Assembly: GCA_965285935.1 (NCBI GenBank)
Contig: OZ260662.1
Location: 18,724,001 to 18,788,000, forward strand
Source: Ophelia neglecta
Lineage: Eukaryota
Length of the DNA: 64,000 bases
Direction: 5' to 3'
Made by a program: the position numbers and the translations under genes. Below, one piece after another: positions 26,405-61,878 of the stretch. Each line of letters opens with the position of its first letter. Within the stretch, counting starts at the first letter, position 1. Under the pieces are notes generated by a model. It was given only the letters and a program-made list of their open reading frames with translations. It was not told the DNA's origin and did not search any database.

Positions 26405-26491
26405 GTATTATTCTTTTCAGGTAAGTGTCAAGATGTCTGTTAGGTCTAAGGGCATATACTCATTTGGTCTGTCTCCTGAAGGGAGGTGAGT
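26405..26491 (+). other. Recursive splice site (AG at 26419-26420) with 65-nt RS-exon 26421-26485; contains ATG 26433 reading MSVRSKGIYSFGLSPEG(R/S), phase 2
   Basis: ttattcttttCAG|GTAAGT is a strong acceptor directly abutting a perfect donor. A second donor, AG|GTGAGTAG, begins at 26486. Confidence 0.7.
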
Positions 26492-27206
26492 AGTTAACAA
26501 TTCAAATATCAAAATATATTAGCTCACAATCATATGGAAACTACGAGCGGTTCTGCCATTTTCTCAGAATATGGCTGAATCCGGTCTGCTTTCAATTTTC
26601 AGCAGCATTTATGTGTAACTGGCCAGCAATGGTGTTTCTCTCATTTTTACAGCTTAGGTTTTTCCCACAAGTGGAAATTAACACTGTTGTATACTTGTGC
26701 TCCGAAGCAATATGTATTCCACATGTATATATGATAGGATGTTTCTATTCGTCACACAATGGAATTGCGTTTTAACTAACGAGCGTTCTAATTAAGAACT
26801 ATATATGAACACTGCCCTGCCTTTTTCTTTAACAAAAATGGTAATTACATTCATCAATATGTCGCCAAGGGCATTGAACCTTATTTAAGCACGGTTTGCG
26901 TATTTGTTTATTGCAACACGTCTGCTTAAATAATTAGCTACCTCTAGTCCGAATTTTCCATGTTCCATACTTGTTAATAGCATTAATCCGGGCAATGGTA
27001 TTGTCCGAGCGGAATTTATATCACCTTAACGCTATTGATATACTTTTTTCTGTCAGTGGGAGCAGGTTATGTTTTCTGTTGTATTGGCAACTCAAAAACT
27101 GGAAAATATCGACACTTTTTTTAAACAGCCATGCTACACAGGTCAGTCGCTTGATGCATTATCTATATGATCAAGACATTGTTGCAGGGTAGCCTTTACC
27201 AATTTA

Positions 27207-27446
27207 CTGGGCCCAGTTTCTGGAAGGCATTTTAACTTGTAATCCGATTTAATCAGGATTAAAGGGCTTAATCGATGCAATCTTTCTAATATGTGTTGTT
27301 CTGGAAGCTGGATTTGGAATTAAACCTAGAAATTTTGGTGATCTTACTCCTGGTGAATAAAAAAACAGATTAACGTGGTCCCAGCTTATCGGTGATAGGC
27401 TAATCTAATTCCGAAACTTAAGACGGGTTCAAGAAACTGGGTCTAG
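27207..27446. mobile_element. MITE of the same family, opposite orientation, ~240 bp
   Basis: TIRs CTGGGCCCAGTTTCTGGAA / TTCAAGAAACTGGGTCTAG (16/19). Subterminal sequence matches the 17638 copy. Confidence 0.7.
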
Positions 27447-27520
27447 AATAGGTCAGTGCCACATGCTCATACAGTAAATATAGGTTCATAAATACGGTCA
27501 AAAGTGCTTTTACTCTGATA

Positions 27521-27571
27521 CTAAAGCGTTCATTAGTTGTCTCTAAAAGAGACAACTAATAAACGCTTTAG
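27521..27571. repeat. Near-perfect palindrome (24-bp arms, 3-nt loop, 1 mismatch)
   Basis: ctaaagcgttcattagttgtctct-aaa-agagacaactaataaacgctttag, flanked by ata on both sides. Confidence 0.9.
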
Positions 27572-30500
27572 ATATGTGACAGATCCGGAATAACAATTCA
27601 TCCATATTTTACAGAACATCAAAGACGCGGAATTATAGTAAATCGCCTGCTTGCAATATGTGATATAAACTTGTGATAATATTAGCCTTTTTGAATGATT
27701 GGCGCTTCGCTATGTTAATTAACTGAACTATTCAGTTGATGTATCTCTTTGAAAGGCACCTGATGTTGGTGGTTCCAGGCGATTACAACCCACGTGAGTA
27801 CATTGTATGCCTGGGAGTGTCCAGGTAAAAAGAAAATTAAAATACGGTAGAGTGTCGTATTCTCTACTGGGCGGGTAAATCTGTTGTTATCTGAAACCTG
27901 CCATTGTGATATTTGTCTGGTCACTAGCTTCATACCTGTGATGCAGCTGCCAGTGTAGTCAATTGACATATAACATGATTGCAAATCTTACATTATAAAA
28001 AACCTGTAGTGTCAAATACTTATTATACGAGCGGCAGGTTTCCAACTGGTATAATTATACATGCGTCCAGGTATTGCAATTTGTCTAAGGTGCAAAGATG
28101 GCCTCTTTGAGAATAAGACCCTATTTGCCCCGACTACAGTTACATAAGAACAAGGAGTAGCTTATGGCACCAAAAGCAAGGTAAATGACTAACAGTGCAA
28201 GCTTTTAATCGAACAAACATACGGCCTAGTTACATAACTGGACAGCATGTTTCTGTGTAAGATATCGAGATTAGTCAATTATGCTAGGAAGGATTACATG
28301 ATTTTTTTCAATTAAGTAAATAATGATAGTTAATTAAGCAATATCTGCTGCTGAGTTCGTGCACTCTGACTCATTCAACACCAAGCTTTGGATTGCTCAA
28401 TGTCTATGTAAGGGCCCTTTCTATAAAATTCAAAGGTGTGTCGGGTAAATCAGTGCACGGCTAACTGTTCTACAATGGCGGACATTAGTTGACGATTGCA
28501 CTATAACCTTCACACAACCTTTACTGCAAAAATCATTGCCAATGCGACATGGTATATGTCAACAATATTGTTTGGTTAGACAAACACGGATACTGAATTT
28601 GGTATGTTTAAGATATTACGGACTTTGACACCCGACTGATAACGAGAACTCATTAAGCAAAAATACTATATTAAATTCTGCTGAAAACCATCAAAATCTT
28701 TCTGCCCAAGGCCAATACATACCAATCCCCCGTTGAATTCCTGTTATTAACTGTAAATGAAATTAGGTCTCAAAAATCAAATATGCTATCATTCGTTTTG
28801 ATAAGTATTCCGTTTTGCATGAAGTTACCTTGACCTGAAAACTTAAATCCTGGTGGTCTATGTTGCCCAAGTATGAAGTAGTGAATCATTATTCCGGAAC
28901 ATTCTATTATAAAAGGACGAAATTTTCAAGACCAGCGTTGTGAAAACGGCGAAATCAGAAGCTTTGGCTTAATGTACAACGGCAGGCATGGGAAAATTAT
29001 CATATCACTCATTTACCCAACCCGAAAACATTAATAGCAGTTTTTTTTTACTTGATATGAATTGCTTTTGGTTTGGCTTATCATTTTGTTTAAATTCAGC
29101 GAAACTAAAAGGCCCATTTAGCTTTCGCTGTGTCTCTCTCGTTTACTGAAAGACTCAAGGACTGTTATTGGGAGGCACACCTAGATAACGATAGTAAATT
29201 TACAGGTAAAATTGCTTGCCGTGGACTCATGATTAATGCAATTTTGCAAGATAAAACAACATTCTGATGTCACGCTTTAATAGGACTGAAGATGTGCATC
29301 AGCAACGGTGTTATATTAGTCCTTAGATGAATGGAATTATGATTTAAAGTCATCTCGGTGTTGTACCGCGGAATTGTACAGACAGAGACAATAAGAACCT
29401 TGTCGCGAACACCAAAACAGTCGTCGATATGGTATTAACTCCTGTTCGGAATGGAGGAATTGGGGATAGGATGCCACAAGTGTTGTTTCTTTTATGACTG
29501 GTGACATGTTTATGTGTGTACTTCGTGACTGCCCGTCTAGGAAAACGGGAGTGGACACCTGGTAGACAGTTCAATATTTGTTAAAAATAATAACCCATAA
29601 TATTAATCCGATTACACCAGGAACCCCTACATGCAGAGTTAAACACACTCATCACCGGTTGCATAATTGTCAATAGGCAAATACAGATATAAAGTTGAAT
29701 CAATCACTCTGATATCACTCGCAATGCAACTTGATATCGAGCAGTATCTAAGATTAAATTGATCTTAGAAAATTTGGTTGTTTGCGAAATCCACATCATG
29801 TCTTTTCTAGTTTGCATTTAGGAGAGAATGGTTATAAATGATGTGTATTTATTTATGAGGCGATATATATTATAACACGAAAAGAACGTCTCTTACATGA
29901 TAAATTTTTAGATCCCCAGGCTTATCCTTAAAAATGTGCATGGTTATAAATACGAACTGGGAATTTAATTGAGTGAATTGACATTTTAGATAATTGATTT
30001 TGTTTGGTTAACCGTTTGGTAAATTCGTTCTTGGTGCTTTGTGTGTGGCACATATATGGTCACCAGGCGATAAGCATAAGGCAAACATGTTTTGACTACC
30101 TTTGACAATGAGCTTCCCGAAGAAATGAGAGCTCATTTATGGGACCTCAGTGCGAAAGATTCGGTGGTATTATTCATAGGCAAGGCGTTGCCCGCCCAAT
30201 TCGCAGAATATTAGTGTGACTTCCTCTTAATCTCCGCAGGAACATGGATGACTATTGTCTGATGGACACATTCGCGCATAGTCGCATCTCTGTATATACA
30301 TTTACGTTACTTGCATACTTTACTCTTATTTTTATTAATATGTCGTATCTAGCATGGAAACTAGCCAATTGTTACAGTACGACTAAGATGGATAAACATC
30401 GCGCATAATCATATCTCTTTATATGAAATTTATTTTACTTGAATAATTTACTAAGAACTTTAATTCAATAGCTCATTAATTTCATCCCATGTACGCTCCT

Positions 30501-30849
30501 AAATAAGAGGAAAAGAATACTTATAAAAATGTGTATGCATTCCACGCAATGTAGCAGGTGCATTGGTAATCATGGAAATTAAACTTAGATCATTAGATCA
30601 ACGTTGCAACTGCGTGTTGTTTATTACGTTGAAGAGGACATCCACTTAATGTGTTAGTGGTGGGCGTTATTGTAATTACATTGTCTTCAGACAGCTTAGT
30701 TCTTTCAGGCAGGAAGACTGAGCACTTCAGTCGACCGATACTGTGTTTATCTAAACACGGAGTTTCTAAGAAGATTTAATTCCATAGCATGTAGGTGGAT
30801 TATGTCCCAAAATATAACATGCAGCTTTGTTCATGGGGTATGAATCGGA

Positions 30850-31115
30850 AGTAATCAAAGAAAAATGCTCCAATACCATGGAATGGGAATATATTTATTA
30901 ACAAACATATACGAAGGGGTATCAGATATTGGAAGGAAGGTGTGATAGTAGCCACTTTGTCCAACCCTAACCTATATCTCACCATACACTGATTTCGATT
31001 TTCGTTTCTTTGCTCATGAACCCCCCTTAATCGATGCATAATGGAGAACATTATATTTTCATTGAAGATGATTGTGATAAATGGCGTTATCCCCAGTATG
31101 ATTTCTTTGACAAAA
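30850..31115 (-). mobile_element. Possible decayed LINE RT N-terminal fragment
   Basis: VKEIILGITPFITIIFN...KVATITP.F resembles LINE ..PFITHIFN..KVAKVTPIFK. Interrupted and weak. Confidence 0.3.
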
Positions 31116-31879
31116 CCGGCCACTGAACAATGTATATATGCACCCACTCCCCAACTCCAGTCTGCCCCTTATCTGGGAAGAGACCGTTTCTACAGAACGC
31201 AATAATGAACAGAGTTCATGTCGCGCTCTCTAACATTGTTCAATTGCAACGCGCTTTGTTACACGCGTACATGGGATAACTTTGCAGACTTATACAATAC
31301 TTAGACAATATACACATTTCAATGACCGTTTTGCACAAAAGACTGCTCTTGCCATGAATAGAGCATTGTCTACATTGTCTACTGTCATGCAATGGTTAAT
31401 CACATATCAGTTTCCGGTGCTGTAACTCATTTGCCTGTATAATTCCCCAACGTGTTTCCAGCAAACAATAAGTTAACATCTTTCCGAATTATAAGCCAGG
31501 TTTGATTGGTTGGAAGCTTCGCTTTATATGCAAATAGAGTATTGGGGATTAACACATGTATCTAGTATTTAAACAAACGCTAATTTTGCGTATTGACTAC
31601 ATGACGTCATGAAAATAAATCTATAGAAAATTATCCTTTCACTGTTATATGCGTACATGAATTGCTGCTGGTCATGTAGCAATAGTAAGTAAAGTTAAAA
31701 AATGCCGGAATACTTCATCTGCTGTGCTAGGAAAACAAAACAATTAACTGACAATGAATATTAAGCCTAGTCCAATAAATATAATCATTTTGTTTCAATG
31801 CAACCTAAAAAATGTATTGTTGTTTCTGAAGTATTTATAATAACAACGATTTATTCCATTGCCGTTATGGATGCCAGAA

Positions 31880-32330
31880 TATGGTAATAAAACCTCTTTT
31901 ATATGACATCTAACGGCTTTGTATAAATCTTACAAGCAATGTCTTTGATTGTGTAAGTTCTCACATATTCAGATAAATGTGTCTTTCCTTTGAAAATGGT
32001 TCATTTGTTAGGATCTAATGTGTCGTTCAGTAGATCTAGCTTTATACAAATGAGCCTCTGCGTTATCATCATTGAAAGATGAGCCAACCATCACAAGTAG
32101 AAACATTAACCATATAAAGGCTTAGAACCACGCTGTATCCACCATTTGTATTTGTTTTGTTTGTGTTATATTCCTACAAATCATTGCAATGCTATTTTCA
32201 TTGCTACATTATCAACTAAGAATTTGCAAGAGTCTTTTTTTTCAAGGAAAGAAAACGACACAAGTCTCATTTGTTTCCATTTTGCGTCCTTTAATAATTG
32301 CTCCAATGCACATTTATATGCCATTCACAA
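31880..32330 (-). mobile_element. Probable highly decayed L1/Tx1 ORF2 fragment (EN-RT linker)
   Basis: Minus strand GAIIKGRKMETNETCVVFF.*KKR resembles Tx1 GAIIRSR...ENEKCTKYFF..EK. DLYKAVR lies further downstream. Confidence 0.4.
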
Positions 32331-33364
32331 ATGCATTATTAGTATTAGAGACACTCTTAACATTCCTGAAATCTGAACGCCCAGCAGTTTATGCGTTAGA
32401 TTATTTAGAAAAAAGGAATGGATAAAAGCCTTGAAGGCATTATTACATAGACTCAGCTATCGAGGATGATCCATATAATTTTCTAGGTATCATGAGAAAA
32501 CTTAAGAAGCAAGGGCACAAATATCGATTAGCGGAAATGAAATAAATACAGTCTGATATCACTGGTCTTTTATAGCAAGCCGGCGAAAGTGGACAAAATT
32601 GTATGGGCCCTGTAGGAGACATTGATGGACTAGCCTCATTTTGCAGTTACAGTGTGAATTAGAGTTCACGTCATTCAAGGCCCGAGTTCTTTTCCTGAAG
32701 TTCCTCCTCCGTCAAACCTACTCGCCTGCACTTCCAATCAAAATGCGACCAAACGAGGTACAAATATAACGCGTAAAGGGTACACCAGTTTTGTTCGTTT
32801 GGGATTTGAGTATTTAACAATACATGGCAAAGTCCTAAATAAATTTTTCGGAACTAACTTACTCATCAAATAACTCGATAACCTAATCATTCAGTCATTA
32901 ATGGATAATGGTTAATGATTTATTGTCACAATTACATTCAATGTGTATACAACAAGAACAAAAAGGAGACTTATACGTCTTATTATCGGTTGAGCCTGTT
33001 AGAGGAATAATTATAATAATACATATTTTAAACAAATGAAAAAATATGAAAGTTATAAATGGGGAAAATATAGGCTGCACACAGCTTATGGTGCCTCTTT
33101 GACAAACGCTGTAAACACTGTGTTATAACATAGGTACACAATCTACATATTTTCACTATTGGACTTATTGAAGGTCTTAAGAGCCTCCGAAAGCGAGGGC
33201 TTGCGAGCCTTGTATAGCGAGTTAGATGTAACAAAGGGGAAGCATACATACTTTCAACTGGGTGTAAGAAAGCTAAGTATTACTATTAGAGTAAACAGGC
33301 TGCTCAGACAGTTGCAATATTAAGCTGCCCCAACAGTTCCAGATGTTCTCCTTCTTATAGCTTC

Positions 33365-34270
33365 TTATACCAGTTGGGGTAACTTAAAGTGAAAAAGATG
33401 AACCAAAAGATGGTGCAAGTCATCTGTATATAATATGCCTGTAAACACATTTATAAAGGAACATATGTACTCGAATATATTACCTATAAGACCTATTGAC
33501 GTCTTCGTTACTCTCGTTGGCTTGTTAATTAATGGTAAGATGATCTCACTAGAAATAATATCATCAAAGTCTTGTGTCGGGTTTTGATTTTCCACATTTA
33601 ATAAGTTGACATTGAAATCACCTGTCCGGTAACATAATTTGTTTACTGATTTTACAATATTAAGTATGGCTGATGTATATTCTTTAAAAACTGGTACATT
33701 CATATCTTGATAACGGTAGATGACAACTACAACAGCATAACGCTTGGTATTTATATATTCCTTGGAAATTTCAATATATTTACATTCGATATTTGTATTT
33801 AAAACATCTACAGACAAATGGCAGGTTATCCTTTACTAGATGCGACAGATCTCCGCCAAATCTATCAGGTCTATAATTACTCACAGATACATAGCCTGGA
33901 ATGGTAAAGCGGTCAACTGTATAATTTCATTTTGTACCTCTAGTTTACAAAGATTTTTTCGCAGCACTAGAAATGTTGGCATGAACCAAAGAAAAACATG
34001 TAGATTATCATGGATTGGGTCTTCGAAGTAATACATTACATGAATTAGAACTACTAGAAGACGTTTGCAAACAATTCACGCCCGGGTATATACAAAAAAT
34101 GTTGAAGATGCACCATCAAGAAGGTCAAATGGTACAAATAGTTTACTGCGATGTTCCCCTTTATTAATACATTTCGAATCATGTTGAAAGTCGCTCAGTA
34201 TCGGGAGGAAATCTTACATAAGATGACTGTAGGGGAATATGTCACAAATTTGTGTCAAGCAAAGCCAATT
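33365..34270 (-). mobile_element. Decayed CR1/L2-group LINE ORF2, APE endonuclease domain
   Basis: ORF 33365-33817 has VIYR, GDFNVNLL, LPLINKPTRVT..S..LI.NIF and TGILYTD..HHL (degenerate SDH). An LPGY..R..GG-like motif lies upstream. 5' end approximate. Confidence 0.9.
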
Positions 34271-37200
34271 ATTAATACTGCAGTAAAGTGTCAGTAAAAC
34301 ACGGGGAAGACAATTGATTTGTGTTATAGAAAAAGGACACAGAGCATACAGTAGCATAAGAATGAATATTTTACCCTACAAGAACATATTCTACACGGTT
34401 CTACTGGGCTCATATGAACCAAACACCACTGCTGGATATACTGTATGATAAATAGTCATGGCTGTTTTGGTTGTTAAGCAAGGGAGTGCATTGTACAATA
34501 AAGTATCAAACAAAAATCTGCTAAGGATTAGTAAAGAAATATATAGCCTGAAAAATTGATAACAAATACGAACAACATGCGTTGGTAGACAGATATATTT
34601 ACGCGATATCAATTAGCCTCACTGCCATAGAATGATAATAAGTATTATACAGTGTATGCATGCTTTTAAATCGCTTTTTATATAACTAATCAATAATAAG
34701 CAGATGTAGCTGACAAGCCTACTGCTCTTTTCTGAGATTAGGCACACTTGAAATTCAGTTACGGGAAAATGATATGATGGCCAGACATGTCCAATCTCTT
34801 TCTAACTCCACTTGAGCTTGCTGAGCGAGGTATTTGATGTTGTGTTTTGCCCTTTGGCAAATAATAATACAGTCTTGGGCAAAGTGATTCTTTTGATATT
34901 GCGATATCACTCAGATATGCCATTGAAGACACTCATATAGGCAAACTTCATTACGCCAGCCTGCAAAACACTCATGTTGACACTCACTACCTGACTACAA
35001 TCATAAAGCCTTTGAGTGCAAAAGCTATTAACAAAACCCTCAACGAAGTATACGAATGCCTTTTTTTTTAACACGGCACCCGCGCCATTCTGTGCTTGGC
35101 CGCTGTTGTGTCGTTGGATACATACACAAAGACTTCTAATACCATTAAGTTCTAACACCTGCCATACTGGTACTGCATGCAAAAGTACATGAACTGTATT
35201 CCTTTTCCGAGGTTTATAGTCTGGGTAACATTCATAGAAAGAAATTGTTAGGGACCTAAATGGCCCCATGGGCATTTAAGTCCACTTAACAATATATAAA
35301 ATACTCAGGATGAAGTTAATAGCAGTCATTGTATTTCTGTTTTGTCTTTTTTATCAAAAGTGTATTTGTGTTGATTCATAGTTTAATTAAAGTGGAACTA
35401 GTGTTCTTTGCAATTATAAGTTGGTTCTGGAAATCTGGATATATATAATTAGTTTATGTATTAGTCAACAACTAATGTTGCTATCATCTGTAGCCACGGG
35501 TAAGAGAATTCATCTCGAAAGAAGTCCTAATTATTTGGAAAAAATAGTATGGTAATGAAACAGGTCGGAGGAAGGAATTAATCACATTAAAGGGTGAAAT
35601 CCTGGTCAGAATTCCGACGCATGTCAGTTATTCCTTCTTGATGATGTGTCATCCTGCCATAGCTGTCACGTAACGTAGATGGAACACTACCGGGAAGTGT
35701 ATAAAGCTCTGTCCGAATGTTACCTGTACTGCTTGTTACAGAATAATGAGAGGAAATTTTACTACAGGCCACGTAAAACAGCGTGATTTCCCATCATAGT
35801 TAAAATAGAACGTTCGCTCAAACCATCAGGGTTCCAAAGAGATGTATTCAAAACATGAATGAAACTTTACAAATCTGTATTTCTAAGTGTTTCTGTAAAA
35901 AAAATGTATAAGCATAGTCTGTGTCAAAATATCAAAATATGCATTCGCGCATCTATCATGCCTCTTGGAAAATGTCATTGGATTGATTCCTTTGTCTGTC
36001 ATGTATTGTTTCAATAATGATAACCTATTTCGTCAAACATTCCACCCTATGCTGATATTGCCCTCAAATAACGAATTAAAAGTATGGCTTTTTGCGCAAG
36101 CTGCGATGGCAAGTGCAATGCTTACTGGATTTCACAGTTTCAAAAAAGAAACGCGAGAAAGTTAGGTTAATCTAATTTTACTTAGCGGATCCATTTCAAC
36201 TCCCAAACTAGGATCACCAGTTTTACCTGCCGATTGCGTTTTTTGTATATATAAGAATGACATTTAAACATGGAAGATAATGCTAATATACATTTAGAGA
36301 GGACCTCACACACTACAACAGTAAGTTGAGTATACTTTTTTTCTGTTTATGTTTTCGTTTATTTTTATTTGCATTACATGTTTATATGTTGTTTGTGAGC
36401 TGGAGAATGCTTAATTGATGTGTTTGGAGCTTTGGTTGCTGGCTCCTGATGATTTTAAACAGATTGAATGGACTGTTCTGAACTATTGATTTGGCTTTCT
36501 TTGCCGGATAGCCACAACCGGGATTTTAAATGATAAAGTGAAACATTCTGTGTTACTTGAATGGAAAAACGACTAGCTTAAATACAAATTGAATAACCAC
36601 CAGGACCAAAATATTGGATACAAAATGATTGATCGATGTGCTTTGTTAGCCTGGAATCAAATACTTTTTTTCCAAAACAATGTAGGCTAAGTCTGAAATG
36701 ATCAGTAGGGGGTTGTTACTTTAAACCCATGCGTCAAAGCTTTTTTTTTTACAACTGCATTTTTGTGAGTTATTGATCATCGACAAGCCATTTCTCTAAT
36801 GCAATCCTAGAGGTATATGCACCTTATGAGTAGAAGGATACCCATATTAATGTTAGGTTCAAAGGCTTGCTGTTCTACCTAATACGGGTAACATGAGATA
36901 TAATGGCCGAACAAAACAAGACGAGTAAAGAAGGCAATTTTGCAACAAAACAAGTCGAGCAACCTCTTTTATGTAAAATCTCTTATGAGAAGAGAGCTTT
37001 GCCTTCGTTTTTTGTACATTGAAGAACTGATGTTCTGTTAAATTCGTGCATTCCATTCGTAGTCTAGATGTATTTACATGATAATATGTAAATGGCATTA
37101 TGTTGTAGGGCCTACGGTTGACGTTTCCTAGTAAAAATGGCATGATTTAATGAACTATTCGACTCGGATCAATTTGCTATACACATTTGAACAATTAATA

Positions 37201-37406
37201 AACGAAAGAAGCTTATTGCATATATTATATAAATTACACTTGGCGCATGTACGTTGATCAATTTAATTTTTACATTTATGGGTTGGTTGTTGTCAATGTC
37301 AATTGTAATTGGACCCAGTTCATGGGCATTACTGTTGCTTAAAGTTCTGTTAATCTGATATACCATATCGAGAGACAAAGCTCCATTAATACTGAACTGT
37401 TAAGAC

Positions 37407-37482
37407 ATGGATACAAATAGGAGAGTGTACCATGCACACGAAGTAAAATTAATGGAGGATAGGCAACAAAAACCAAACCCAG
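37407..37482 (+). CDS. Candidate small exon MDTNRRVYHAHEVKLMEDRQQKPNP, phase-1 donor
   Basis: gacATGG start context, purine-rich open frame, full consensus donor CAG|GTAAGT at 37483. No recognisable homology. Confidence 0.3.
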
Positions 37483-42637: not shown

Positions 42638-43260
42638 AAGCTAGCCTAAGCAAGTTAGCCTTGAGCTGCTTTTTGAACAAAGTCACAGACTCAGAAGATC
42701 TTACATGAGCCGTTATGTACTTCCAAAATCTGGGACCGTATTAGTTAAATGATTGATCACCAGCTCCAGACAGTCTTGTTTTCGGCACAACAACTTGTGT
42801 CATTGACTTGGTTTGCAGAACACTCATCAGCTCGGGGAAGTAGACAGGTATCGCCATTCATTCTTGCACATCATCAAGGAAAGCTTGAGATTAATTCGAT
42901 GACATCACACAGGGCAGTAGTCAATGCGATATGTCACAAGCGCATGTACCGATATCTTCGTTGTATCAATTGGCAGACGACTCATGAGCTGCAGTTGTCA
43001 ATGATTGGCCAAACATGACTATCCAACTCTCAACAAGCTTGCTCTCAATCGCAGCCATCGTCCCAGCGACGCAATTATCAGTGTAAAATTGGATTAAGTT
43101 GTCCTGTCATCCAGTTCTTTAAGGATCAAAACCTTGTCATCAACCATCGACTAGTACGCTGTATTAATATATTAATAAAGAAAATAGTGCCTTGCAGATA
43201 TTTCGCAAAACAGTGAATTATGGATTCCTTGTGTATACGCTTTAACTGCCCCGCTCAATT
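42638..43260 (-). mobile_element. Decayed L2 LINE, RT core remnant to ORF2 C-terminus
   Basis: Minus strand gives IHCFAKYLQ (degenerate HCYADDTQ), KNWMT, TKISVHALVTYRIDYC and VVPKTRLSGAGDQSFN*YGPRFWK...SSESVTLFKKQLKANLLRLA, the characteristic L2 ending. Confidence 0.85.
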
Positions 43261-48200: not shown

Positions 48201-49394
48201 CCACCTATAGTTGATACATGTTCTTTCAACTATGTCTCGGCCCAGCTACGAAAGTATATATAAATGAATATGAACCGTCATTCACAGGAACCAGGCAGAT
48301 GAATTAAACTCGATTCTGCTGATATGAGAAGTACGAGAACCGGGTTACTGTTTTCCTGCAACTCTTCTGGGCTGCTTGATGAATAACAATGACTCATCGA
48401 GCTAAGTCGACGCTTATATCAAGTTATTAATGGCGGTACGAGCCCTGGTTTCCGGTATATAATGCACGCCGATGGTAATTTTCAAACGGCGGCCGTTATT
48501 TCTGATAAATATGGTAATACGTCAGCGGAGGCTTGTGTTTAAGTTGCTTAGCTGGATTCTTATAGTAGTGAATGGATGCATGTTAGTGTTAAAACAGATA
48601 TGCCTGCTAGCAAGAAATTATCGTGGCTTTTATCAAGGTTTTGGCCTCTAATAAAAATTTGAAATTAAGTTCGAAAACTAGTTAATAAATCCAACGCAGC
48701 CGATTATGTAGGCATTTATCAAGATCGAATGCCTGAAGAAAAAAAATCGAAACAATGCACATACTGTATTTTTAATCAAAATTTGCATTTCAGTAACATC
48801 AAATCACTCGTAGGGCGTTGGGTTTCTTATAACGCCAGTGCCAATGTATTCGTACTTATAACAGCCCTCCTCCATTCAGTCACTCCTTTTGATACGAAAC
48901 TGCCAGCTCAGGGTGAAATTATATCAATGTAAAGTGATCCTTGGTTGAAACAGCTATGTCACCTTGGCGCCCTCGTGAAAAGAGAAATACCTCGGTGTGG
49001 GCAGTATGACTGACTTCAAAGTCTTGTACACATTGCTTCATTATAAACACGTATTGTTTTCATTCGGTCAGACTGGCCACGTTTTGCTAGGGTTTTCTCT
49101 ACTGCACGCATATCATTGATACCGTGTTAACAATAATTAATGAGTTTTGTTCGTATGAGATTTGCCTGTCCCGCTGTTCTGCTAATATTCATGAATTAAA
49201 GCGACATGGTAACTCTTGGAGATAAAAGTTGTGCTTTCGAATGCTCATAATGTCTAGTAGATAATAATAATAATGTGTGCATTAAGAGATATTTAAACAC
49301 TCCGGTGTATAACATCATTTGGTTCCCCGGATGTTCAGGACCACCGAACTCAAAACCCAAATATACCAGGCGACCGGCGTATGTAATAAACTAG

Positions 49395-49488
49395 GATTCC
49401 AATTATACTAGAATTTCTAGACCCGATTCCAAATGTACTACATTTTCTAGACATCATGACTTAAACTACTAGGGTTTCTTGACCTCCC
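49395..49488. repeat. Degenerate ~30-bp minisatellite, about 3 units
   Basis: gattccaattatactagaatttctagaccc / gattccaaatgtactacattttctagacat / ..acttaaactactagggtttcttgacct. Confidence 0.7.
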
Positions 49489-52400: not shown

Positions 52401-55400
52401 CTCAAACAAACTATTTAATGGATGGCATCAGACCCTTTTATGCATTACCTATTTAGACCTAAGAAATATGTACTTAATGTAAATTCCAATTTGCCTACGC
52501 ATGCTTATCGGAGGTCCACACTCGCCACCTATTTTCTATGAATAGGCACGAGCTAAAAGCCGAGGACTGCTTAGCAAGTGTTGACCAGAATGTAACAAAC
52601 ATGCAAAGACATATAACAGGTGATTCATGGCGCCTCGGGCCTTGTAACACATATGAACTTCAATGGTCAATCGTTATTTATTGAATTAGGCACTTTGTCC
52701 GTTAAATGTGCACGTGTTTCCTAATGATCTACCTTTTATTCGTATCCTCTCCCATATGGTTTCATATGGTTCCTAAGCGTACCATTTTGTTCCTTCGTAA
52801 GTACACCTTCATATGATAATCATTCGTACTGTACACGATGCCCCCTTTTTGAAGCATTTTGATGTATTTTTATTAAGAACATTTCATATCAAAGAGAATA
52901 TTAAAAGTATAAATTTTTGTTAAATGTTGTTTAAAGTTAGGGCACTCGGGATCGATGTTTGTTTATCACCAGTTAACGGTGAACTCATACTAATTTATAA
53001 TATTTTATCGCCGAATATGTATTGTCTACTCTCAAATTTTTTATTTGTTCATTTACGCTGGTTACACATTTTCGTACTATTGTACATGTTCATTGTCTGC
53101 CAGGTACCCGCTGTCATATGCTTCATATTTTGATTGTCGGCCGCATACGTTATCTCGTGTGGTCATATATGTCGGTAATTTAATGCCATAAAGCAATGAT
53201 GTATCTTCCGTGACGAATCGCAACTGCTTCGTAGGAAAACAATCGACCATTTACATTAAATACACGATGAGACTCCTGCTGCCTTCCCTGCTGACTAACG
53301 ATTGTTTTCCCCATCATACGTTGTTGACGTCTTCCAAACCTCGTTAGGATCATGTCGGTGCGTAGGCGATCTCGGTTCAAGACCTAAATCTCCAGTTGCT
53401 TTATTGCATCCCTTTTTCATGCCTAGCTAGTTGCCGCCTGTATATTATCCGTCAGTGATTAAAGCCTAAGCCCCTTGGCTACCGCCCCTAGGCCAATAAG
53501 CATTCAGGTTTTCTCTTATGTAGCAGTGCTGATGCAAGTGCGCTCTGTCTACAAGCCAACAGCAATTGACTAGTAAGCGCCTGCCAAAATTGAGCCCGTA
53601 ATTTCAATGATGCTTGAAAAATACTGGGATGAAAAATATATACGCGAACGGCCTTGCCATGTCATGCCTTCAATGACAGTTTGAAGTCAACATCAATTTA
53701 TTCTACACACACCCTAAGCATGGGTATCAAACACGACAGATTGCCCTCCAAAATAATTTCATCGTACAATTCATGTTAATTAATCACATGACAACATTTA
53801 CATGTGTACATTCAAGCGGTTATTTAGTTTATAATTTTTCCAGTGGTAAATCTTGTATTTAAACTATACTTACAGACAGACGTGGTAATTTCAATTGCAA
53901 GGAGCTTATTATATAATTCTTAACTAATGTTTGGTGCTAAAACTGGCTAGTGTTGTAATATTCAAACATACTATTTTATAAACATACTTCAACTCCGTTG
54001 CGTGACTGCACAAAATTATTAACACGTACCATGATAAGGCTCAGTCATAAGTCATGTCATGTCTCCAGTGAACATTAATGTTCTATTGGGGTCTGTCGGG
54101 GCAAAGAGAGGGGGTTATAGTTTAGGTTGGGGGCTTACTGGAAAAATCGTGTTTCAAAGACTTCTAGCAAAAGTCACTATCTTTGAGCCCAGTCCGGATA
54201 TAGAGGTCTAAAATATCACATGCTTGAATAAAAGCCGTATCTTAAACGCGTAGCGAATACATTTAGACTAGGTGACAAATAACGATGGCTCCAAATAAAC
54301 GACTGAGTAGTAGTTGCAACAGATCAAAGAGAGTCCTATATTAAAGTAATACATATGAGTGTTTTGATTGGCTCCTTGTAATGAAATTCGCTGCTGCGGT
54401 GACCTCGCGCTACTTCCGGAGAAAACATGAAAACTAAAAGAATACACCTATCCTTATAGACGCTCGACACGCCTGAATCCCAGTGTACGTCAGAATCACA
54501 GCCCTCAATACCGGTAACCTATTGAACACGTATTAGGTAAAAATAAATACATGTTACTACTTCGCACCTTTAAATCATAAGGGACTTGATGGAAACATCA
54601 TATTAGACTTTGAATTTGCTCTCGCTCTAGGATGATACGTAATAATATTCTGTAACTAAGTGGCGCCTAATGATTATTATTGACTATTGCCTCCTGCTTT
54701 TGTTTCGTTCTATGTGATATAATGTCAACGATATGTAAAGTTTTCATTCAGACTTGATTATGTAAAATACGAGGTAAAGTCAAACCTGACTTAATTCGGC
54801 TCAACTGAGGCTACTACTTGATTGGATGAATGCCAGGTTCAGGTAGCTAATAACACGCTAATTACACGCTAATGGATGTTGTAATCACCACCAGTAAATT
54901 TAACCCAAGTGTGTCGTCATGGTAAATGCATTATTCATCTGAATTTATTGCTGGTTCGGAAAAGCTTAGTGCAAAACACTACCACATTGACTTTCTTCTT
55001 TTATCAACGTAAACTCACTTTGCCATAAAACAATATTACCCCCCTGATACGAATAAAAAACACCCAATATCCGATTTAAAACCGTCCTCAATATATAGTT
55101 AACACAAAACATCTAACTCTATCATTGTCATTGGCATTACAAAACCAGACCTTTTTCAATGTATGACACTCCTTCTTTCACAACTAATGTATATTGCATT
55201 AACTAAAAAACTGACAATATTCAATGATTGCACCATGTTATATTCGTCAACAGGATTATTTCTTACTTTGCACTAGAATGAAAAACCTTCTGCAAAACAG
55301 GTCAAATTAAGTATAATCGTGGGGAAGCAGGTGCGCTGATCAATTTGAAAACTTGCCTGGCTTCTGTTTTCCGGGATTTAAAGCAATTTCCTCCTCCAGT

Positions 55401-56669
55401 GCTGGCAATATCCGAATGGCTTCTGCCGTTCAATGTTTTTGGCAACTCCTAATGAAAATATATGCATTAAGGGTTACTATGTTCAATGTTACCGACGTTT
55501 ACTGATTACACCACACCACACATGTATGTGCATTGCCATGTATGTCTAGAGTCAATAATGGACCAATAGGTGTCTTGGGCTTTTGTTTGTTTTCGTGTGA
55601 CTAAATGTACGAAGGAAAAACTTCATTTTTATTTAATACAAAGGTTTGTGCAGAGACAGTGACAAACACCTGAGCGTTATCTGTAAAATTTCAAAGACAA
55701 ATGAAATTAATCTGTCCCTCATGCATTAAAAGTGAGGGCTTATTTATTATCAATATCGCGTTCGAGTCTCTGAAAATATCATGATGATATATCAGGACAC
55801 ATTTTGTTTGCATATAAATTTGTCCTTAAACTCTGCTTGAACAAAACATGCGTCTCGATCGAAAATAGTTTTCCCTCGCGTACCAGTTAATGCACTTTAT
55901 TCCATTTCTAAGGCTTCTTTGCTCCACCCTATTCAAAAACAATTAATGGGGAATGATGTGGGTTTTCGTAGGATCTAGCAATTCAGCTTCATCAGGTTTA
56001 AATATGAACTTTAAGTCGACAAAAAAAAGAAGAAAAAACGCTGCATGTTTGTCAGAAACGCTAGTATGAATAATTACGATTTGACCAGACAATAAAATAA
56101 TTAACAAAACATAGATTTTATTGATGCAAATATCAATTAAGATTTTTCCGCGGTTGAGCTGAGCCATGCCTCCATAGATCTGTGTTTATATTGCCATCGT
56201 TTCCAAATACTTGCTCTTGTGATTAGATTTTCTAAGCTAATATGATCCATGTCAAACCTTCTTTGTCTGCTTGTTGACATTATAATACTCCATTCGTCCC
56301 CGGCGGAAAGAACTTACCTTTTAAATTCGCCCTCGCTTTACTATACAATGTAGTCAGGTCTGCGAAATCACAGACAAGTGCCATCATGTGTTGCCATGTT
56401 AGTTGCAGGCAACTCGCACGTGCTTGTTTTAATATAGTTTAGTATGTTTGACGTGTTGACGTACAAGACATCCATAACTAATATTATGATTTGTAAATAT
56501 AAAAGAAATAAATAGAAACCATTGCTCGCTCCTAAACGTAGTCGGCCCGTTTACCGACGAAGCCCTATGGTGATTAGCGAACTCGCCTTCGAGTGCCATA
56601 CGTAGTCGCCCTACATATTTTATTTCTATTATCTGAGTTTAGAAAGCACTGTGACATGGGAATGAGCTG

Positions 56670-56671
<2 letters not shown>

Positions 56672-56713
<42 letters not shown>

Positions 56714-56720
56714 ATAATAA
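56672..56720. repeat. (AT)n microsatellite followed by short (ATA)n
   Basis: Direct inspection. Confidence 0.95.
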
Positions 56721-59700
56721 CTCTCGCGATCTATCTGGCGGTAAAATGACCACAAATTAGTTTTTACGCCCTCCACGACCAAAACAACGTGTCCCGCCAT
56801 GTTTGGTGTTGCATACGTAGTGTGACACTCCACGGCAATGTAGTCAACCATCCAAACACAATAACTGTGAAAATAACCTCGAGCGACTTGGCACCCGCGC
56901 GAGTTAACACCAGTCGGATCAGTCTCCTGACAGCGCCAGAGTTCATACCGTAATGCTACAAATTTTGGAGGTCCGCGTTCGCCGTTCGCGCGTCTGCCGA
57001 TTCAGAACAGCCTATAATATGTTGGCAAAACGAGGTTAATCGACAATTGACCGAGGAACATGTTTGTGCCCAGCTGTCTCATTATGAACCGTATTTACTA
57101 GGAGATAATCGAATTGAGATCTATTTACGTTGGGACAGAGGCCAGGGGGTGAAGTGGAGCGGGGATGTCCCGAAAGGATGCGGTAACCTTGTCAGTGACG
57201 TGCAGGTGTTTACGTTTTAAGGTCGTTACCCCCACTTTTTAATGTCCAAATGGAAATTGATTTGTCCTGTATGATAGACAGTTTCAGATGAATTAGACTA
57301 ATTCATATCCTGTTTTGCAGAAGGTGAATTTGGTTTTGTTCGCAAAAGAAATGATAACCAACTTCCATGGTTCGGAAATCATAGTCAACGATGGGAGCGG
57401 CGCTTGGAGTTTTTGATTACAATTATCAACTATTTATTTGTAACAAAACTTTTCATCTAAATAATTGGAGAAGACGTATAATATACAAATAATTTGCCTC
57501 CGCTGTAGTAGGAGATTCCCAAGTTAATCAAAATAAGTAGAAATCACTATCATCCCACCAGCATTATATCATTCAAATTGTTCAGAAGCAAATTTGAATA
57601 CTTAAATATACAACACGGTGTGTAATGTGCCTCCATGCAATATACATTGGAATGAATATATCATTACCAAACACATGCGTAGCTATGTGCTATCGTTAGA
57701 CTTTGGAAATCTGCGCAAACTGATGGATGTTGTGAGCAGTGTGAACATTTAAATTATCAATCAATATCAAAATAATTTTGACAGCAAGTTGATCATTCAA
57801 AATGGCGGCACATGTTTCCCATTCCAATGAGTTTTCATCACCACGCATATTACTTAGACGATTCGTTATTTAACGATTCATTATTAAAAGCCCATTGCAA
57901 CAATAACAGGCGACATAGCGTGCATCTCCCGGGAAACTCTGTTAAGGGCTGATTAGAGACATATATTCCATTGATAGGCGCTAAGTAGTGTGCTGCCATA
58001 CAGACTTCCCATACAGAGCCAGTTTTGTTAGAGCTTGTTTCAGACACTTTCTTTGTATAGAGCGTGTATATTTCAATTCTTATGACGCAACTAATATGGT
58101 ACCATATGTATCCTTGTTCATTAAAGTATTGTAACCGCACCGGGCGTAATGACTGAAGACTTTAGGTTTGACGGGAGCAATTTATTTTCTGGTCCTCTGG
58201 CCTATTCAAATCCATACAACGAACTCCGTAAAACTGTAATACAGGTGATATACATTAGGGCAATTATACAGTCTACAAACGAGATACAAGAAGACATTAT
58301 GGGCAATCGAATAAATAGTATACACAAACCTCTTTAGCTTCTGGTGGGCTCGGTGCAGCCATCCGTCTGCCACGAGGACGAAGAAAGAACTGGACAGTAC
58401 AAAGGGGACCACGTGACAGGCCGGATAAGGACCACCGCACCCACCAGATGGCCTCACAATCGATTCAAAGCGGCAATTACAAAAACTACTAATACGCTGC
58501 AGCTACAAGTATCAATCATTTTTTTTCAAATATGTACCAGGAATGACAACATCTAAACGATCAACTAATAATAATATGACAAATACATCAGAAACATTCG
58601 CTGAGTCGTTAATATAGAGGAGTGGTAAAGATAATAAGATAGAATCATGAGCTTCACCACATTTAAAACGAGCATAACTGAAAGAGTACCATTATTATCT
58701 AAAAACTGATGTCCTCAAATGACGAACATTTTTCCGCAATTCGAAAGCACCGCATCTCATACTATAGTGTTCAAGTTAAAGAAATAGTGAAATGTGGTTG
58801 AGTTGCTCCAAGGCCTTTGCGAAATCTTCAGGGTGATGCACTGCCACCAGTCCATTGCACAATGCCACTAGTCAAACAGCAAAAAAAAAGCCAACTTTAT
58901 GATATTTTTTCACGAATCTGACATACATTTATATTTTGATGGTTATATACAAATTGATGGTTCAGTATTTTGAGTTGGACGACGCAGCATATACGGAATC
59001 CGATAGGTGGAGCAGAATATTTCATAATCCATTTAAAAATCGTTAAAACTGTAATAACCTAATTTGGAAAAAAAACTTCTTTCTTGATGGAGTTTAATAA
59101 AAATTTAAATGTTCAATTAACGAGGCGATGCTTACCCAACCACTGCCCACGGAATATAACTACTCATCGCCGGTAAATCGCTTCGGTTCGTGAGTGCAAG
59201 GTCCTTTTTTACATATAAAAAAATCCCCTTGCCTGTACTTGCTGCTTTCCGATGCTTTCGGACAATCTTATGACTGCTTTGTTTGCCAGAACTGTTTATT
59301 TCTTGATACAATCGAGAAATGTTGTTTTATCCCCTCAACACATATTTTGATGCAAAATGATATATTTCATTAAAGGATGATCTATTTATGGTATTGCAGT
59401 TGTGTCTAGTGGGCTAGGATAGGGTTATTCTTTTTTCTCTCACAGCGCAGCGCCAAACATCGTACCGCCGGAAAGAGGTAGCACAATTTTTGCCCGATTA
59501 TGATTATCATGCGAATTGATCGGATTTAGGAGACTAGGTTGGCGGAGCGCACCTTGTATCTAGCAGATATAAATCTACACGTAAACACCAGTAAAGGCAC
59601 TGCCTACCATTGTTCGATCATCAAAAAGACTATCACAGAATAAAGACATAATGTTGCTGTGCTATTGTGCCTTTAATCATGCTGTTCGCTGCCATTGTGG

Positions 59701-61814
59701 TGATAAGAAACAGATGACAGCGGATAGAGTCATGCTTTGCAGCCCGATATACATTGTCTTCCACAGAAGAATATAAATATTGCTTTAAGTTAAGCAGCTT
59801 ATATCACCAAGACACCAAAATCCTTTAGAGGGGTTTTTCAATTGGTACCAAATAAGTAATAGTTTGTAATTGGAGTCATGATATAAGCGGATTTATTATG
59901 TATACTTTGCTTTAGTTTAAAGTACAAATGCCGGTTTTACACTAGCCTAAAGGTGTATGGGATAGCCACAAGAAAAAAAAAATTTAACGTATGTGTTTAC
60001 ATAGGCTGCCTATATAGTTGACGAATGGACCATGTGAGCGTGTGTATGCATATCAACACCTTCTGAAACAATTGACACTTACTTTGGTCGAACAGAGTGT
60101 GACGTATAGATGCCCATAAACGGTACAAGGGCGATAATTATATGGTGGTTATTTAATTTAACAAATCATTAGATGTTACGATTGGAATTTTTTTACTATT
60201 GTACAGCATGGTGTCTGGTTATCACGGGAAAACAATTTCCACGTGACATCTAGCTGTGCCGAGGGGCACGTGATAAACCACCCCACCTCCCAGTGCTTTT
60301 TAATGATCGATTGCTAAATCAATTACGATGAGAATGGGGACCATACTTTTTCAGTCGGGATAAATGTCGTGCTGGGAAACAGAGTGATGTTGTAGTTTGC
60401 GGCCTTCGAATATTGTGCATTTTGTCGGAAATGACACGCAGCATCTCGCAAGTAATGTATCTACTTCCAGGTCAAAAACAAGTTAGAGGAGACATTATAG
60501 GCATCAGACAATGATCAATCGGTTCCAGCGGTATATATTATACCCTGGACAGATAATTAACCCCAAGACACTTAATACATATCTATCATTCCACCGAGCC
60601 CAAGGGACAAGTGTAATTATATGTTAAGCTTCTGCTCATGGTCAGTTTTCTGGCTCCATTTTACAACCAAGACGACATATGCCATCGTAACACTTACACC
60701 TCTTATACTATTCAGTCTTTCCTCTCGGATATGGCGCCCAGCGTGTACATAATCTTAATAAATTGTAACCTGCAAGAATATCCCAGATGGTTATTCAAAA
60801 CGGAAATTAATTGCATATCAATTTTTTTTTATTAGTTGAACTTGGTTATGTTTTTGCTATTCTACACACCTTTGTAGTATGTAAGTAGTGTATGTGGATG
60901 AATTCAGTAGAAATAGTACTCTTATTGGGGCATAAATCGTCTATCCTCTATCTACAGCTAATGGTTATATGAGCCTTCTTCTGCTGTTCGATGTTGATTT
61001 ATTTCGTCTTCAAAACCCAATAAGTATTTAAGTACGATTTATTATAGACAATAATATTTACCTTAAGTGTTGTGGCTTGTGTCGTTTTGGTGCAGTATAC
61101 TTCTTTCGTTTGTACAGCGTTTCAGCTCCCAATCATAATAGGACGCTTGACAGCATGTAGCGCGACTGCACGGATGTGTTTGTTATGAACAGGCCCGGCT
61201 ATTCTATTGTCTTATTCGTCAATGCCTATATAACTAACCTTTTGAACATAGTGTCAAAGGGATTCAAATTTGTGTCTCTAAAAAGGACAGATAACAACAT
61301 CTGTGTGCATATAAAAACTAGATTTCCCCTTCTAGGAAGTAAGAATTGCCAACTAAAATATTTTTAATAAAAAGAAATGCATCAGGGTATAATCGAACGT
61401 TGTATTATTTTGTTGTATGCTATCATTTAGAAAGATTCGTTCTTCTCTTTCCAGTAATCTGTGTGAAAAAATTCTGTTCGCCGGTAAATTTACGATAAAG
61501 ATAACTATTCATTCATAATCAAGTTGGTTTTAATATATATAAGAGCATGTATCTATGAAGGACCTATCAAACTGGTTTTGTCCTACGAAACAGAAACTTA
61601 CAGTGTGACTAAAGGCCCATTAGAACAATGAAACTTTGATTGATTATAGTTTGTCAAATAAGTAGATATTGGGTAATTCAGATATAAGGGTGGTAATTCC
61701 ACTATATAGGAATATAGGCAACATATAGTACATGCTTTTACATTCGTGCCATATTTTGCAACATTTGTGAATATAAGCATGCATATTTCAAACCTAATAC
61801 TGTAAATGTATTTA

Positions 61815-61878
61815 TGTTTCTTTATTTGCGTTTCAGGTAAGTTGATCATTTTTGAAAATTATCCGCTAGTAGGTGAGT
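61815..61878 (+). other. Recursive splice site (AG at 61835-61836) with 36-nt RS-exon 61837-61872
   Basis: tttctttatttgcgtttCAG|GTAAGT, then AG|GTGAGTAG at 61873. The RS-exon has stops in two of three frames. Confidence 0.7.

What the first reader, a model, noticed from the sequence alone, without database searches (positions are those of the whole stretch)
26405..61878. Pair of recursive splice sites with matched RS-exons about 35 kb apart in a putative giant intron
Seen: the 12-mer TTTCAG|GTAAGT, preceded by a pyrimidine tract, occurs at 26420 and 61836 on the + strand. In both cases a second donor with the identical 10-mer AG|GTGAGTAG follows 65 and 36 nt later, and the rest of the two loci is unrelated, so this is not a repeat family. 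My rough base-composition estimate is about 0.01 chance occurrences of the 12-mer per 64-kb strand. Established: 3'SS/5'SS fusions (ratchet points) with a short cryptic RS-exon and competing downstream donor define recursive splicing in Drosophila long introns and some long vertebrate neuronal genes. Inference: this locus removes a very long intron stepwise, in an invertebrate lineage where recursive splicing may not have been documented.
Basis: partly seen in the sequence, partly recalled or inferred. Interest (0 to 1): 0.85.

Follow-up and report, generated by a model that had tools for sequence, protein, structure and literature searches.

The report
Two candidate recursive splice sites, annelid
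Two "splice acceptor fused to splice donor" signals, each followed by a short dummy exon, lie 35 kb apart on one strand of gene-free DNA upstream of a Rap-GAP gene in an annelid worm; they match a genome-wide class of such sites, so long introns are probably removed stepwise here as in fruit flies, but no RNA data could be obtained.

Summary
TTTCAG|GTAAGT occurs only at 26415-26426 and 61831-61842 (+). Each copy has a pyrimidine tract and a second donor, AG|GTGAGTAG, 65 and 36 nt downstream. The flanks are unrelated and single-copy.

The new evidence is genome-wide. The 12-mer occurs 268 times, against 174 for the reversed control. Neighbouring copies within 50 kb lie on the same strand 21 times and on opposite strands 3 times (chance is about 2.3 each). 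Among non-repeat sites in same-strand clusters, 17 of 31 carry a GTRAGT donor 28-69 nt downstream. Only 2 of 40 isolated sites do, and 2 of 93 control windows. The two window sites meet all three criteria, so they are very unlikely to be chance.

Most likely they are Drosophila-type ratchet points with cryptic RS-exons in a long + strand intron. The host is probably a distal-promoter transcript of the downstream Rap_GAP/CNH (GARNL3-like) gene.

The first RS-exon (ATG, matching phase) may also be expressed. This scan has reported similar sites elsewhere in this genome (ephrin, THOC2, RYK). The kind is known; the lineage is new.

The parts
26394..26420 (+). 3' splice-site region of site 1: branch-point-like CTAAAT (26394-26399), pyrimidine-rich tract, TTTCAG ending at 26420
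   Evidence: Sequence read. Pyrimidine fraction 0.65. T at -5 and -6, as in 196 of 197 Drosophila ratchet points (Duff et al., doi 10.1101/006163). Use as a branch point is inferred.
26415..26426 (+). Ratchet point 1: TTTCAG|GTAAGT, junction between 26420 and 26421
   Evidence: Single-copy flanks.
26421..26485 (+). RS-exon 1, 65 nt. It starts with GTAAGT, has an ATG at 26433, is open in one frame only, and ends in phase 2
   Evidence: open frame 0 only. The length lies within the class range of 28-69 nt. The phase equals that of the two 296-nt ATG exons at L003:904-1199 and L005:3042-3337.
26484..26493 (+). RS-exon 1 donor, AG|GTGAGTAG (GT at 26486-26487)
61794..61836 (+). 3' splice-site region of site 2: branch-point-like CTAAT (61794-61798), long pyrimidine tract, TTTCAG ending at 61836
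   Evidence: Pyrimidine fraction 0.78. Use as a branch point is inferred.
61831..61842 (+). Ratchet point 2: TTTCAG|GTAAGT, junction between 61836 and 61837
   Evidence: Single-copy flanks.
61837..61872 (+). RS-exon 2, 36 nt, with stop codons in two of three frames (GTA AGT TGA; G TAA). Inclusion after RS-exon 1 or after the 10.5-kb exon gives an immediate stop
   Evidence: Also matched by the genome-wide two-part pattern (place C2:18785831-18785878).
61871..61880 (+). RS-exon 2 donor, AG|GTGAGTAG (GT at 61873-61874). An alternative donor, TTG|GTAAGTAG, has its GT at 61898-61899
10516..10526 (+). Candidate upstream exon end, ATGGACAAG|GT (donor GT at 10525-10526). Joined to site 1 it would regenerate AAG|GTAAGT. 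Its ATG is in frame with RS-exon 1
   Evidence: That this is an exon is inferred only.
13540..13560 (+). Second candidate upstream exon end, ...GTGGACAAG|GT (donor GT at 13559-13560), weakly similar to the 10.5-kb one
   Evidence: BLAST finds 67 nt at 73%, E about 1e-4. That this is an exon is inferred only.

Best explanation
Both sites are functional recursive splice sites (ratchet points) of the Drosophila type, used on + strand pre-mRNA. Each is first recognised by exon definition as a short RS-exon: acceptor plus pyrimidine tract upstream, GTGAGT donor 65 or 36 nt downstream. The upstream exon is spliced to the AG. This places GTAAGT directly after that exon and regenerates a consensus donor: AAG|GTAAGT if the upstream exon is one of the ...GACAAG| candidates, or GAG|GTAAGT if RS-exon 1 is kept. 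The regenerated donor then competes with the RS-exon's own donor. If it wins, the RS-exon leaves with the next intron segment and the mRNA keeps no trace of it. The intron is therefore removed in pieces, about 13-16 kb, then 35.4 kb, then 13 kb or more. The host is most likely a transcript from a distal promoter of the Rap_GAP + CNH (GARNL3-like) gene that follows on the same strand. Shown here: the motif anatomy, single-copy status, strand agreement with the downstream gene, and membership of a genome-wide, strand-clustered class. Inferred: transcription of the window, the identity of the upstream and downstream exons, and the two-step splicing itself.
For: 1. The anatomy is exact, with T at -5/-6 and a pyrimidine tract.
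2. Genome-wide there are 268 copies of the 12-mer against 174 of the reversed control.
3. Adjacent copies within 50 kb are same-strand 21 times and opposite-strand 3 times, against a uniform null of 2.27 and 2.28. After dropping 6 duplicate-derived pairs, 15 same-strand pairs remain, Poisson P = 2e-8.
4. In non-repeat, same-strand-clustered sites, 17 of 31 have a GTRAGT donor 15-89 nt downstream (observed lengths 28-69). The controls give 0/31 upstream, 1/31 far downstream and 1/31 antisense. Isolated sites give 2/40. Fisher P = 2.5e-6 and 1e-10.
5. About 0.001 chance pairs with the full architecture are expected in the whole genome.
6. In 160 kb of this locus only these two sites have the full architecture on +, and none has it on -.
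7. Rap_GAP and CNH exons lie on + at 142-158 kb in window-extended coordinates. No Pfam domain is found in any of the 32 longest window ORFs, which fits intron or intergenic DNA.
8. Two diverged paralogous site pairs elsewhere keep the motif region (81-89% identity) better than their flanks (49-68%).
9. The Drosophila model has RS-exons of about 50 nt and donor competition (PMC8605326). Segment sizes there are 2.6-63.6 kb (doi 10.1101/006163).
10. One other 12-mer site lies 21 kb upstream of the RYK WIF exons, on the same strand.
Against: No upstream exon is established, and the two candidate first exons are only weakly similar. The two ATG exons at about 75 and 97 kb show no conserved acceptor or upstream conservation (A3). 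They therefore look like first exons with their own promoters, and the window might lie upstream of the gene's main promoters. Nothing links those ATG exons to the Rap_GAP exons by data. Strand composition and poly(A)-signal counts do not mark + strand transcription. The overall enrichment of the 12-mer is only about 1.5-fold, so most isolated copies are chance. The broader two-part pattern gives 73 against 60 because repeats inflate both counts. No orthologous sequence was available to test conservation.
Confidence: 0.6

Rival explanations
1. The sites are real recursive splice sites, but the host is not the Rap_GAP/CNH gene. It would be a separate, unrecognised + strand transcription unit, such as a long non-coding RNA or a gene with very small exons, that covers the window.
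For: No exon in the window can be tied to the downstream gene. The nearest coding exons (about 75 and 97 kb) look like independent first exons. No window ORF has a Pfam domain.
Against: Nothing else on + is visible in 264 kb until the Rap_GAP exons. Known recursive sites lie mostly in long introns of protein-coding genes, often downstream of distal promoters (PMC8605326).
Confidence: 0.15
2. The two units are ordinary alternative, poison or decoy exons that are simply included or skipped. The GTAAGT at their 5' ends is never used as a donor. Site 1 would be an alternative start-codon exon and site 2 a poison exon.
For: RS-exon 1 has an ATG at 26433 and ends in phase 2, like both 296-nt ATG exons. 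The ATG at 10516 is in frame with it. Its own donor, GAG|GTGAGTAG, is strong.
Against: Ordinary exons have no need to start with a perfect GTAAGT. Genome-wide, the exact fusion TTTCAG|GTAAGT is what co-occurs with a nearby donor and with same-strand clustering. The phase match has a one-in-three chance. Exons that start with a donor consensus and are included are themselves recursively spliced where tested (PMC6224609, PMC8605326).
Confidence: 0.12
3. Chance: two consensus-like strings in untranscribed, AT-rich intergenic DNA, with no function.
For: Roughly two thirds of the 268 genomic copies are at chance level (174 in the control). Isolated copies show no further features. Transcription of the window is unproven.
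Against: A same-strand neighbour within 35.4 kb has probability 0.012. A donor in the right window has probability 0.028 per site. About 0.001 such pairs are expected genome-wide, whereas several multi-site loci of this kind exist.
Confidence: 0.08

Closest known systems
Drosophila intronic ratchet points with cryptic RS-exons (Hatton 1998; Duff 2015, doi 10.1101/006163; Joseph 2018; Joseph & Lai 2021, PMC8605326; Pai 2018, PMC6110457)
   Same: The same fused consensus (Y)nTTNCAG|GTAAGT with T at -5/-6, a short downstream unit ending in a GTRAGT donor (about 50 nt in flies; 28-69 nt in the class found here), several sites per locus on one strand, and spacings of tens of kb (35.4 kb here; 2.6-63.6 kb in flies).
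   Different: The lineage is Annelida, not Diptera. No RNA proof and no cross-species conservation are available. The RS-exon donors at this locus have a full exonic AG, which makes them stronger than most in the class, so skipping is less assured.
Vertebrate RS-exons (Sibley 2015) and EJC-protected annotated RS-exons (Blazquez 2018, PMC6224609)
   Same: An RS-exon is defined first, then the regenerated donor competes with the RS-exon donor. Such an exon can be included in mRNA, and RS-exon 1 (ATG, compatible phase) could behave that way.
   Different: Vertebrate cryptic sites are few and lie in very long neuronal genes. Whether inclusion here depends on the EJC or on promoter choice is unknown.
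Ubx microexons mI and mII (expressed RS-exons)
   Same: A short coding exon that begins with a donor consensus and can be kept or re-spliced away, changing the protein isoform. This is the model for RS-exon 1 if its ATG is used.
   Different: The Ubx microexons are frame-preserving internal exons and are ultraconserved. Here the unit would supply an alternative start, and its conservation is untested.

Membership tests
Recursive splice site / ratchet point (Drosophila type) | Juxtaposed 3' and 5' splice-site consensus, (Y)n-NCAG|GTAAGT | tested here: met
   Exact TTTCAG|GTAAGT at both sites. Pyrimidine fraction 0.65 and 0.78.
Recursive splice site / ratchet point (Drosophila type) | TT at positions -5 and -6 of the acceptor (196 of 197 fly ratchet points) | tested here: met
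   Both sites read T T T C A G at -6..-1. Criterion taken from doi 10.1101/006163.
Recursive splice site / ratchet point (Drosophila type) | Short RS-exon closed by a downstream 5' splice site, so that exon definition is possible | tested here: met
   GTGAGT donors at +65 and +36 nt. The feature is enriched only in same-strand-clustered sites genome-wide: 17/31 against 2/40.
Recursive splice site / ratchet point (Drosophila type) | Lies inside a long intron, on the sense strand of the host gene | tested here: inconclusive
   The strand matches the downstream Rap_GAP/CNH exons and the window has no recognisable coding ORF. No flanking exon pair is proven.
Recursive splice site / ratchet point (Drosophila type) | RNA evidence: junction reads into the AG, lariats from the regenerated donor, saw-tooth intronic coverage | not testable with these tools
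No transcript-derived protein of this gene is in the protein libraries.
Recursive splice site / ratchet point (Drosophila type) | Sequence conservation peaked on the ratchet point in related species | not testable with these tools
   Only fragments of 20 kb or less around the conserved ATG exon could be fetched from other species, and they hold no such site. Indirect evidence only: two paralogous site pairs elsewhere keep the motif better than their flanks.
Cryptic (never expressed) RS-exon | Exon content non-coding, frame-breaking or stop-containing, so it must be skipped | tested here: inconclusive
   RS-exon 2 meets this, with stops in two frames and an immediate stop in the relevant phases. 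RS-exon 1 does not: it has one open frame with an ATG and a phase that matches the other ATG exons.
Expressed RS-exon (Ubx mI/mII, vertebrate annotated RS-exons) | Exon that starts with GURAGU and is found in mature mRNA | not testable with these tools
   RS-exon 1 starts with GTAAGT. There are no mRNA data.

The most novel reading that the evidence does not exclude
Zero-nucleotide recursive splicing through cryptic RS-exons, in the exact form known from Drosophila, is a selected genome-wide way of removing long introns in an annelid. Several tens of sites exist, often 3-4 per locus at spacings of 20-50 kb. The RS-exon mechanism would then predate the split of Ecdysozoa and Lophotrochozoa, and with the vertebrate cases probably Bilateria. 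At this locus the first RS-exon may in addition work as a splice-controlled alternative start-codon exon.
Probability: 0.55. Interest if true: 0.65.

Novelty: new member of a known kind. Interest (0 to 1): 0.55.

Why it matters
Recursive splicing has been shown by RNA evidence in Drosophila and in vertebrates. In the paper library searched, no paper on the subject deals with annelids or molluscs; the three papers that hold both terms are on other subjects. If these sites work, the fly-type architecture (fused site plus a cryptic exon of about 30-70 nt) is not a dipteran peculiarity but an old solution to the problem of splicing across tens of kilobases. The genome-wide list produced here gives a short set of multi-site loci where one total-RNA or nascent-RNA library could settle the matter. 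For annotation, such sites mark the sense strand and the extent of very long introns, including distal promoters that gene finders miss. They also warn that tiny exons starting with GTAAGT should not be put into gene models without RNA support.

Tried and rejected

2. Transcript-derived proteins:
- A word-index search and an exhaustive HMMER search with the 98-aa ATG exon found only genomic ORFs of about 100 aa in other species. No full-length protein was found.
- Their contigs carry no Rap_GAP exon and no fused site within reach.
- The ESM Atlas gave nothing usable.

3. Joined gene model: none was built or searched. Exons were searched one by one by reference.

5. Broad pattern YYYYAG|GTAAGT-N20-50-GTRAGT: 73 against 60 in the control, no overall enrichment, because repeat families and a tandem array fill both counts. 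Only the TTTCAG subset is informative, with 21 listed against about 3 expected by my own estimate from motif frequencies.

6. Strand composition, poly(A)-signal and hexamer asymmetry as a proxy for transcription: uninformative even over the known gene body.

7. 'Tandemly duplicated first-exon cassette' at 10.5 and 13.5 kb: MAFFT suggests 76% column identity, but BLAST supports only 67 nt at 73%. This is weak.

8. Third CAG|GTAAGT at 37480: rejected, no pyrimidine tract.

9. Repeat-family explanation for the pair: rejected.

10. Ephrin cross-check: a same-strand 12-mer lies 41 kb from the ephrin-domain exons. Its position relative to the intron described by the earlier agent was not resolved.

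The window has no N runs.


Full report
OBSERVATION

The 12-mer TTTCAGGTAAGT occurs exactly twice in the 64-kb window, at 26415-26426 and 61831-61842, both on the + strand. Dinucleotide-preserving shuffles expect 0.01 copies. The 10-mer AGGTGAGTAG also occurs exactly twice, at 26484-26493 and 61871-61880. Each fused acceptor|donor is therefore followed by a second donor, which closes a unit of 65 nt (26421-26485) or 36 nt (61837-61872).

Both acceptors have a pyrimidine tract, T at -5 and -6, and a branch-point-like CTAAAT or CTAAT 22-42 nt upstream. The branch points are read from the sequence and are untested. The flanks of the two sites do not align (A2). Each flank is single-copy in the genome.

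WHERE THE WINDOW LIES

The window is G000:C2:18724001-18788000 of a 762-Mb genome. Earlier notes of this scan take the genome for an annelid's. None of the 32 longest ORFs in the window has a Pfam domain.

I fetched 200 kb downstream. Coordinates beyond 64000 below continue the window numbering. On the + strand at about 142-158 kb lie exons of a Rap_GAP domain followed by a CNH domain, a GARNL3-like architecture.

Two paralogous exons precede them on +, at L003:904-1199 (74,904-75,199) and L005:3042-3337 (97,042-97,337).
- Each starts with ATG, codes for 98 residues plus 2 nt (phase 2) and ends in a GTGAGT donor.
- The exon is conserved as an ORF of about 100 aa in genomic contigs of other species, at 40-82% identity.
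- Conservation starts at the ATG, and no conserved acceptor precedes it (A3). These are therefore probably first exons with their own promoters.
- Nothing ties them to the Rap_GAP exons except strand, order and the open donor.
Exons were handled one at a time.

GENOME-WIDE TEST (NEW HERE)

The 12-mer occurs 268 times in the genome, against 174 for the same string read backwards. Most copies are therefore chance. I collected 267 of the 268 positions.

Strand clustering.
- Adjacent copies within 50 kb lie on the same strand 21 times and on opposite strands 3 times.
- Uniform random placement expects 2.27 and 2.28. Opposite-strand pairs are thus at chance level and same-strand pairs are about nine-fold enriched.

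Flanks of 100 sites.
- Thirteen small repeat or duplicate families were set aside. They include four near-identical copies about 100 kb apart at C5:98.3-98.6 Mb.
- Without the 6 duplicate-derived pairs, 15 same-strand pairs remain (Poisson P = 2e-8).

Downstream donor among non-repeat sites.
- In same-strand clusters, 17 of 31 sites carry a GTRAGT donor 15-89 nt downstream. The observed unit lengths are 28-69 nt.
- The control windows give 0/31 upstream, 1/31 further downstream and 1/31 antisense.
- Among isolated sites, only 2 of 40 carry such a donor. Fisher P = 2.5e-6 and 1e-10.
- Clustered sites also have richer pyrimidine tracts (mean 0.70 against 0.57).

Several loci carry three or four such sites on one strand at spacings of 17-50 kb. 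One example is C5:87.52-87.61 Mb (-), with units of 39-41 nt. Two diverged paralogous pairs keep the motif region (81-89% identity) better than their flanks (49-68%).

The genome thus holds two populations of the 12-mer. One is chance copies. The other is a class with the full ratchet-point-plus-RS-exon architecture. The two window sites meet all three class criteria: a same-strand neighbour at 35.4 kb, a pyrimidine tract, and a donor at +65 or +36 nt. About 0.001 such pairs are expected by chance in the whole genome. In 160 kb of this locus they are the only such sites on +, and there is none on -.

MECHANISM PROPOSED

This follows the fly model (PMC8605326; doi 10.1101/006163).
1. Each site is first defined as a short exon.
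2. The upstream exon is joined to its AG.
3. The GTAAGT then regenerates a donor that competes with the RS-exon's own donor.
4. If the regenerated donor wins, the unit is removed with the next intron segment.

Candidate upstream exon ends in the window are ATGGACAAG|GT (donor at 10525) and ...GTGGACAAG|GT (donor at 13559). Either would regenerate AAG|GTAAGT. Their status as exons is inference. Their mutual similarity is weak: 67 nt at 73%, against a more generous MAFFT picture.

RS-exon 2 gives an immediate stop in the relevant phases (AG|G TAA, or GTA AGT TGA), as expected of a cryptic unit.

RS-exon 1 differs.
- It is open in one frame and has an ATG at 26433 in a fair context.
- It ends in phase 2 like the two 296-nt ATG exons, and it is in frame with the ATG at 10516.
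- It could therefore be an expressed RS-exon in the manner of the Ubx microexons.
- The phase match alone has a one-in-three chance.

WHAT IS NOT SHOWN

No transcript-derived protein of this gene exists in the libraries searched. No orthologous non-coding DNA could be reached. Base-composition and poly(A)-signal asymmetries do not discriminate, even over the known gene body. Transcription of the window, the host gene and the recursive reaction itself therefore remain inferred.

RELATION TO EARLIER NOTES OF THIS SCAN

The same kind of site was reported before on other DNA of this genome (ephrin, THOC2, RYK, a GPCR gene), each time without RNA.
- RYK, checked in part: WIF-domain exons lie at C2:34712393-34713585 (+), and a 12-mer copy lies at C2:34691299 (+), 21 kb upstream on the same strand.
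- Ephrin: a same-strand copy lies 41 kb from the domain exons. I could not place it relative to the intron that note describes.

LITERATURE

In the held library, no paper on recursive splicing deals with annelids or molluscs. The three papers that hold both terms are on other subjects. Subscription-only papers are not covered.

VERDICT

These are very probably functional fused splice sites of a genome-wide class, and most likely recursive splice sites. The 'giant intron', its host gene and the splicing steps still need RNA evidence. The mechanism is a known kind, in a new lineage.

Noticed in passing
L003:904-1199 and L005:3042-3337 (window-extended 74,904-75,199 and 97,042-97,337), + strand: Two paralogous 296-nt ATG exons 22 kb apart, each ending in a GTGAGT donor in phase 2. 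They are conserved as ORFs of about 100 aa in other species (P0001-P0008) but have no Pfam family. They are probably alternative first coding exons of the Rap_GAP/CNH gene, though no data link them to it.
   Followed up: partly
window 26421-26485 with 10516-10524: The 65-nt unit has an ATG at 26433, is open in one frame, and ends in the same phase as the two 296-nt ATG exons. The ATG at 10516 (ATGGACAAG|GT) is in frame with it. An RS-exon that doubles as an alternative start exon is possible.
   Followed up: partly
G000:C5:87523602-87609670 (-); C5:14035651-14114389 (+); C2:10649968-10805459 (+); C9:6943599-7029813 (+); C2:8049652-8101417 (+): Loci with 3-4 fused acceptor|donor sites on one strand at spacings of 17-50 kb, each followed by a GTRAGT donor 28-64 nt downstream. 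These are the best places to test recursive splicing in this genome.
   Followed up: partly
G000:C5:98318022, 98418029, 98523879, 98612260 (+): Four near-identical copies of the same sequence about 100 kb apart, which indicates a large tandem segmental duplication. They inflate same-strand counts and were excluded from the statistics.
   Followed up: no
G000:C8:83012698-83013039 (+): A tandem array with a 55-nt period in which each unit ends in TTCCAG|GTAAGT. This is a satellite that mimics the fused motif.
   Followed up: no
L067/L068 (C9:75116439 and 75134487, +) and L054/L055 (C8:6409137 and 6428852, -): Diverged paralogous site pairs that keep the pyrimidine tract, AG|GTAAGT, unit length and downstream donor, while their flanks have drifted to about 50-68% identity. 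This hints at selection on the architecture.
   Followed up: partly
window-extended about 166-168 kb (-), 177-183 kb (+), 215-221 kb (+), 239-242 kb (+): By eye only: death-domain-like ORFs on the minus strand just after the Rap_GAP/CNH gene, two long retrotransposon-like ORF sets, and one LINE-like ORF pair. Not tested with Pfam.
   Followed up: no
window 33365-33817 (-): The longest ORF in the window (150 aa) looks like a fragment of a retroelement endonuclease by eye, but it has no Pfam hit at E <= 0.01.
   Followed up: partly
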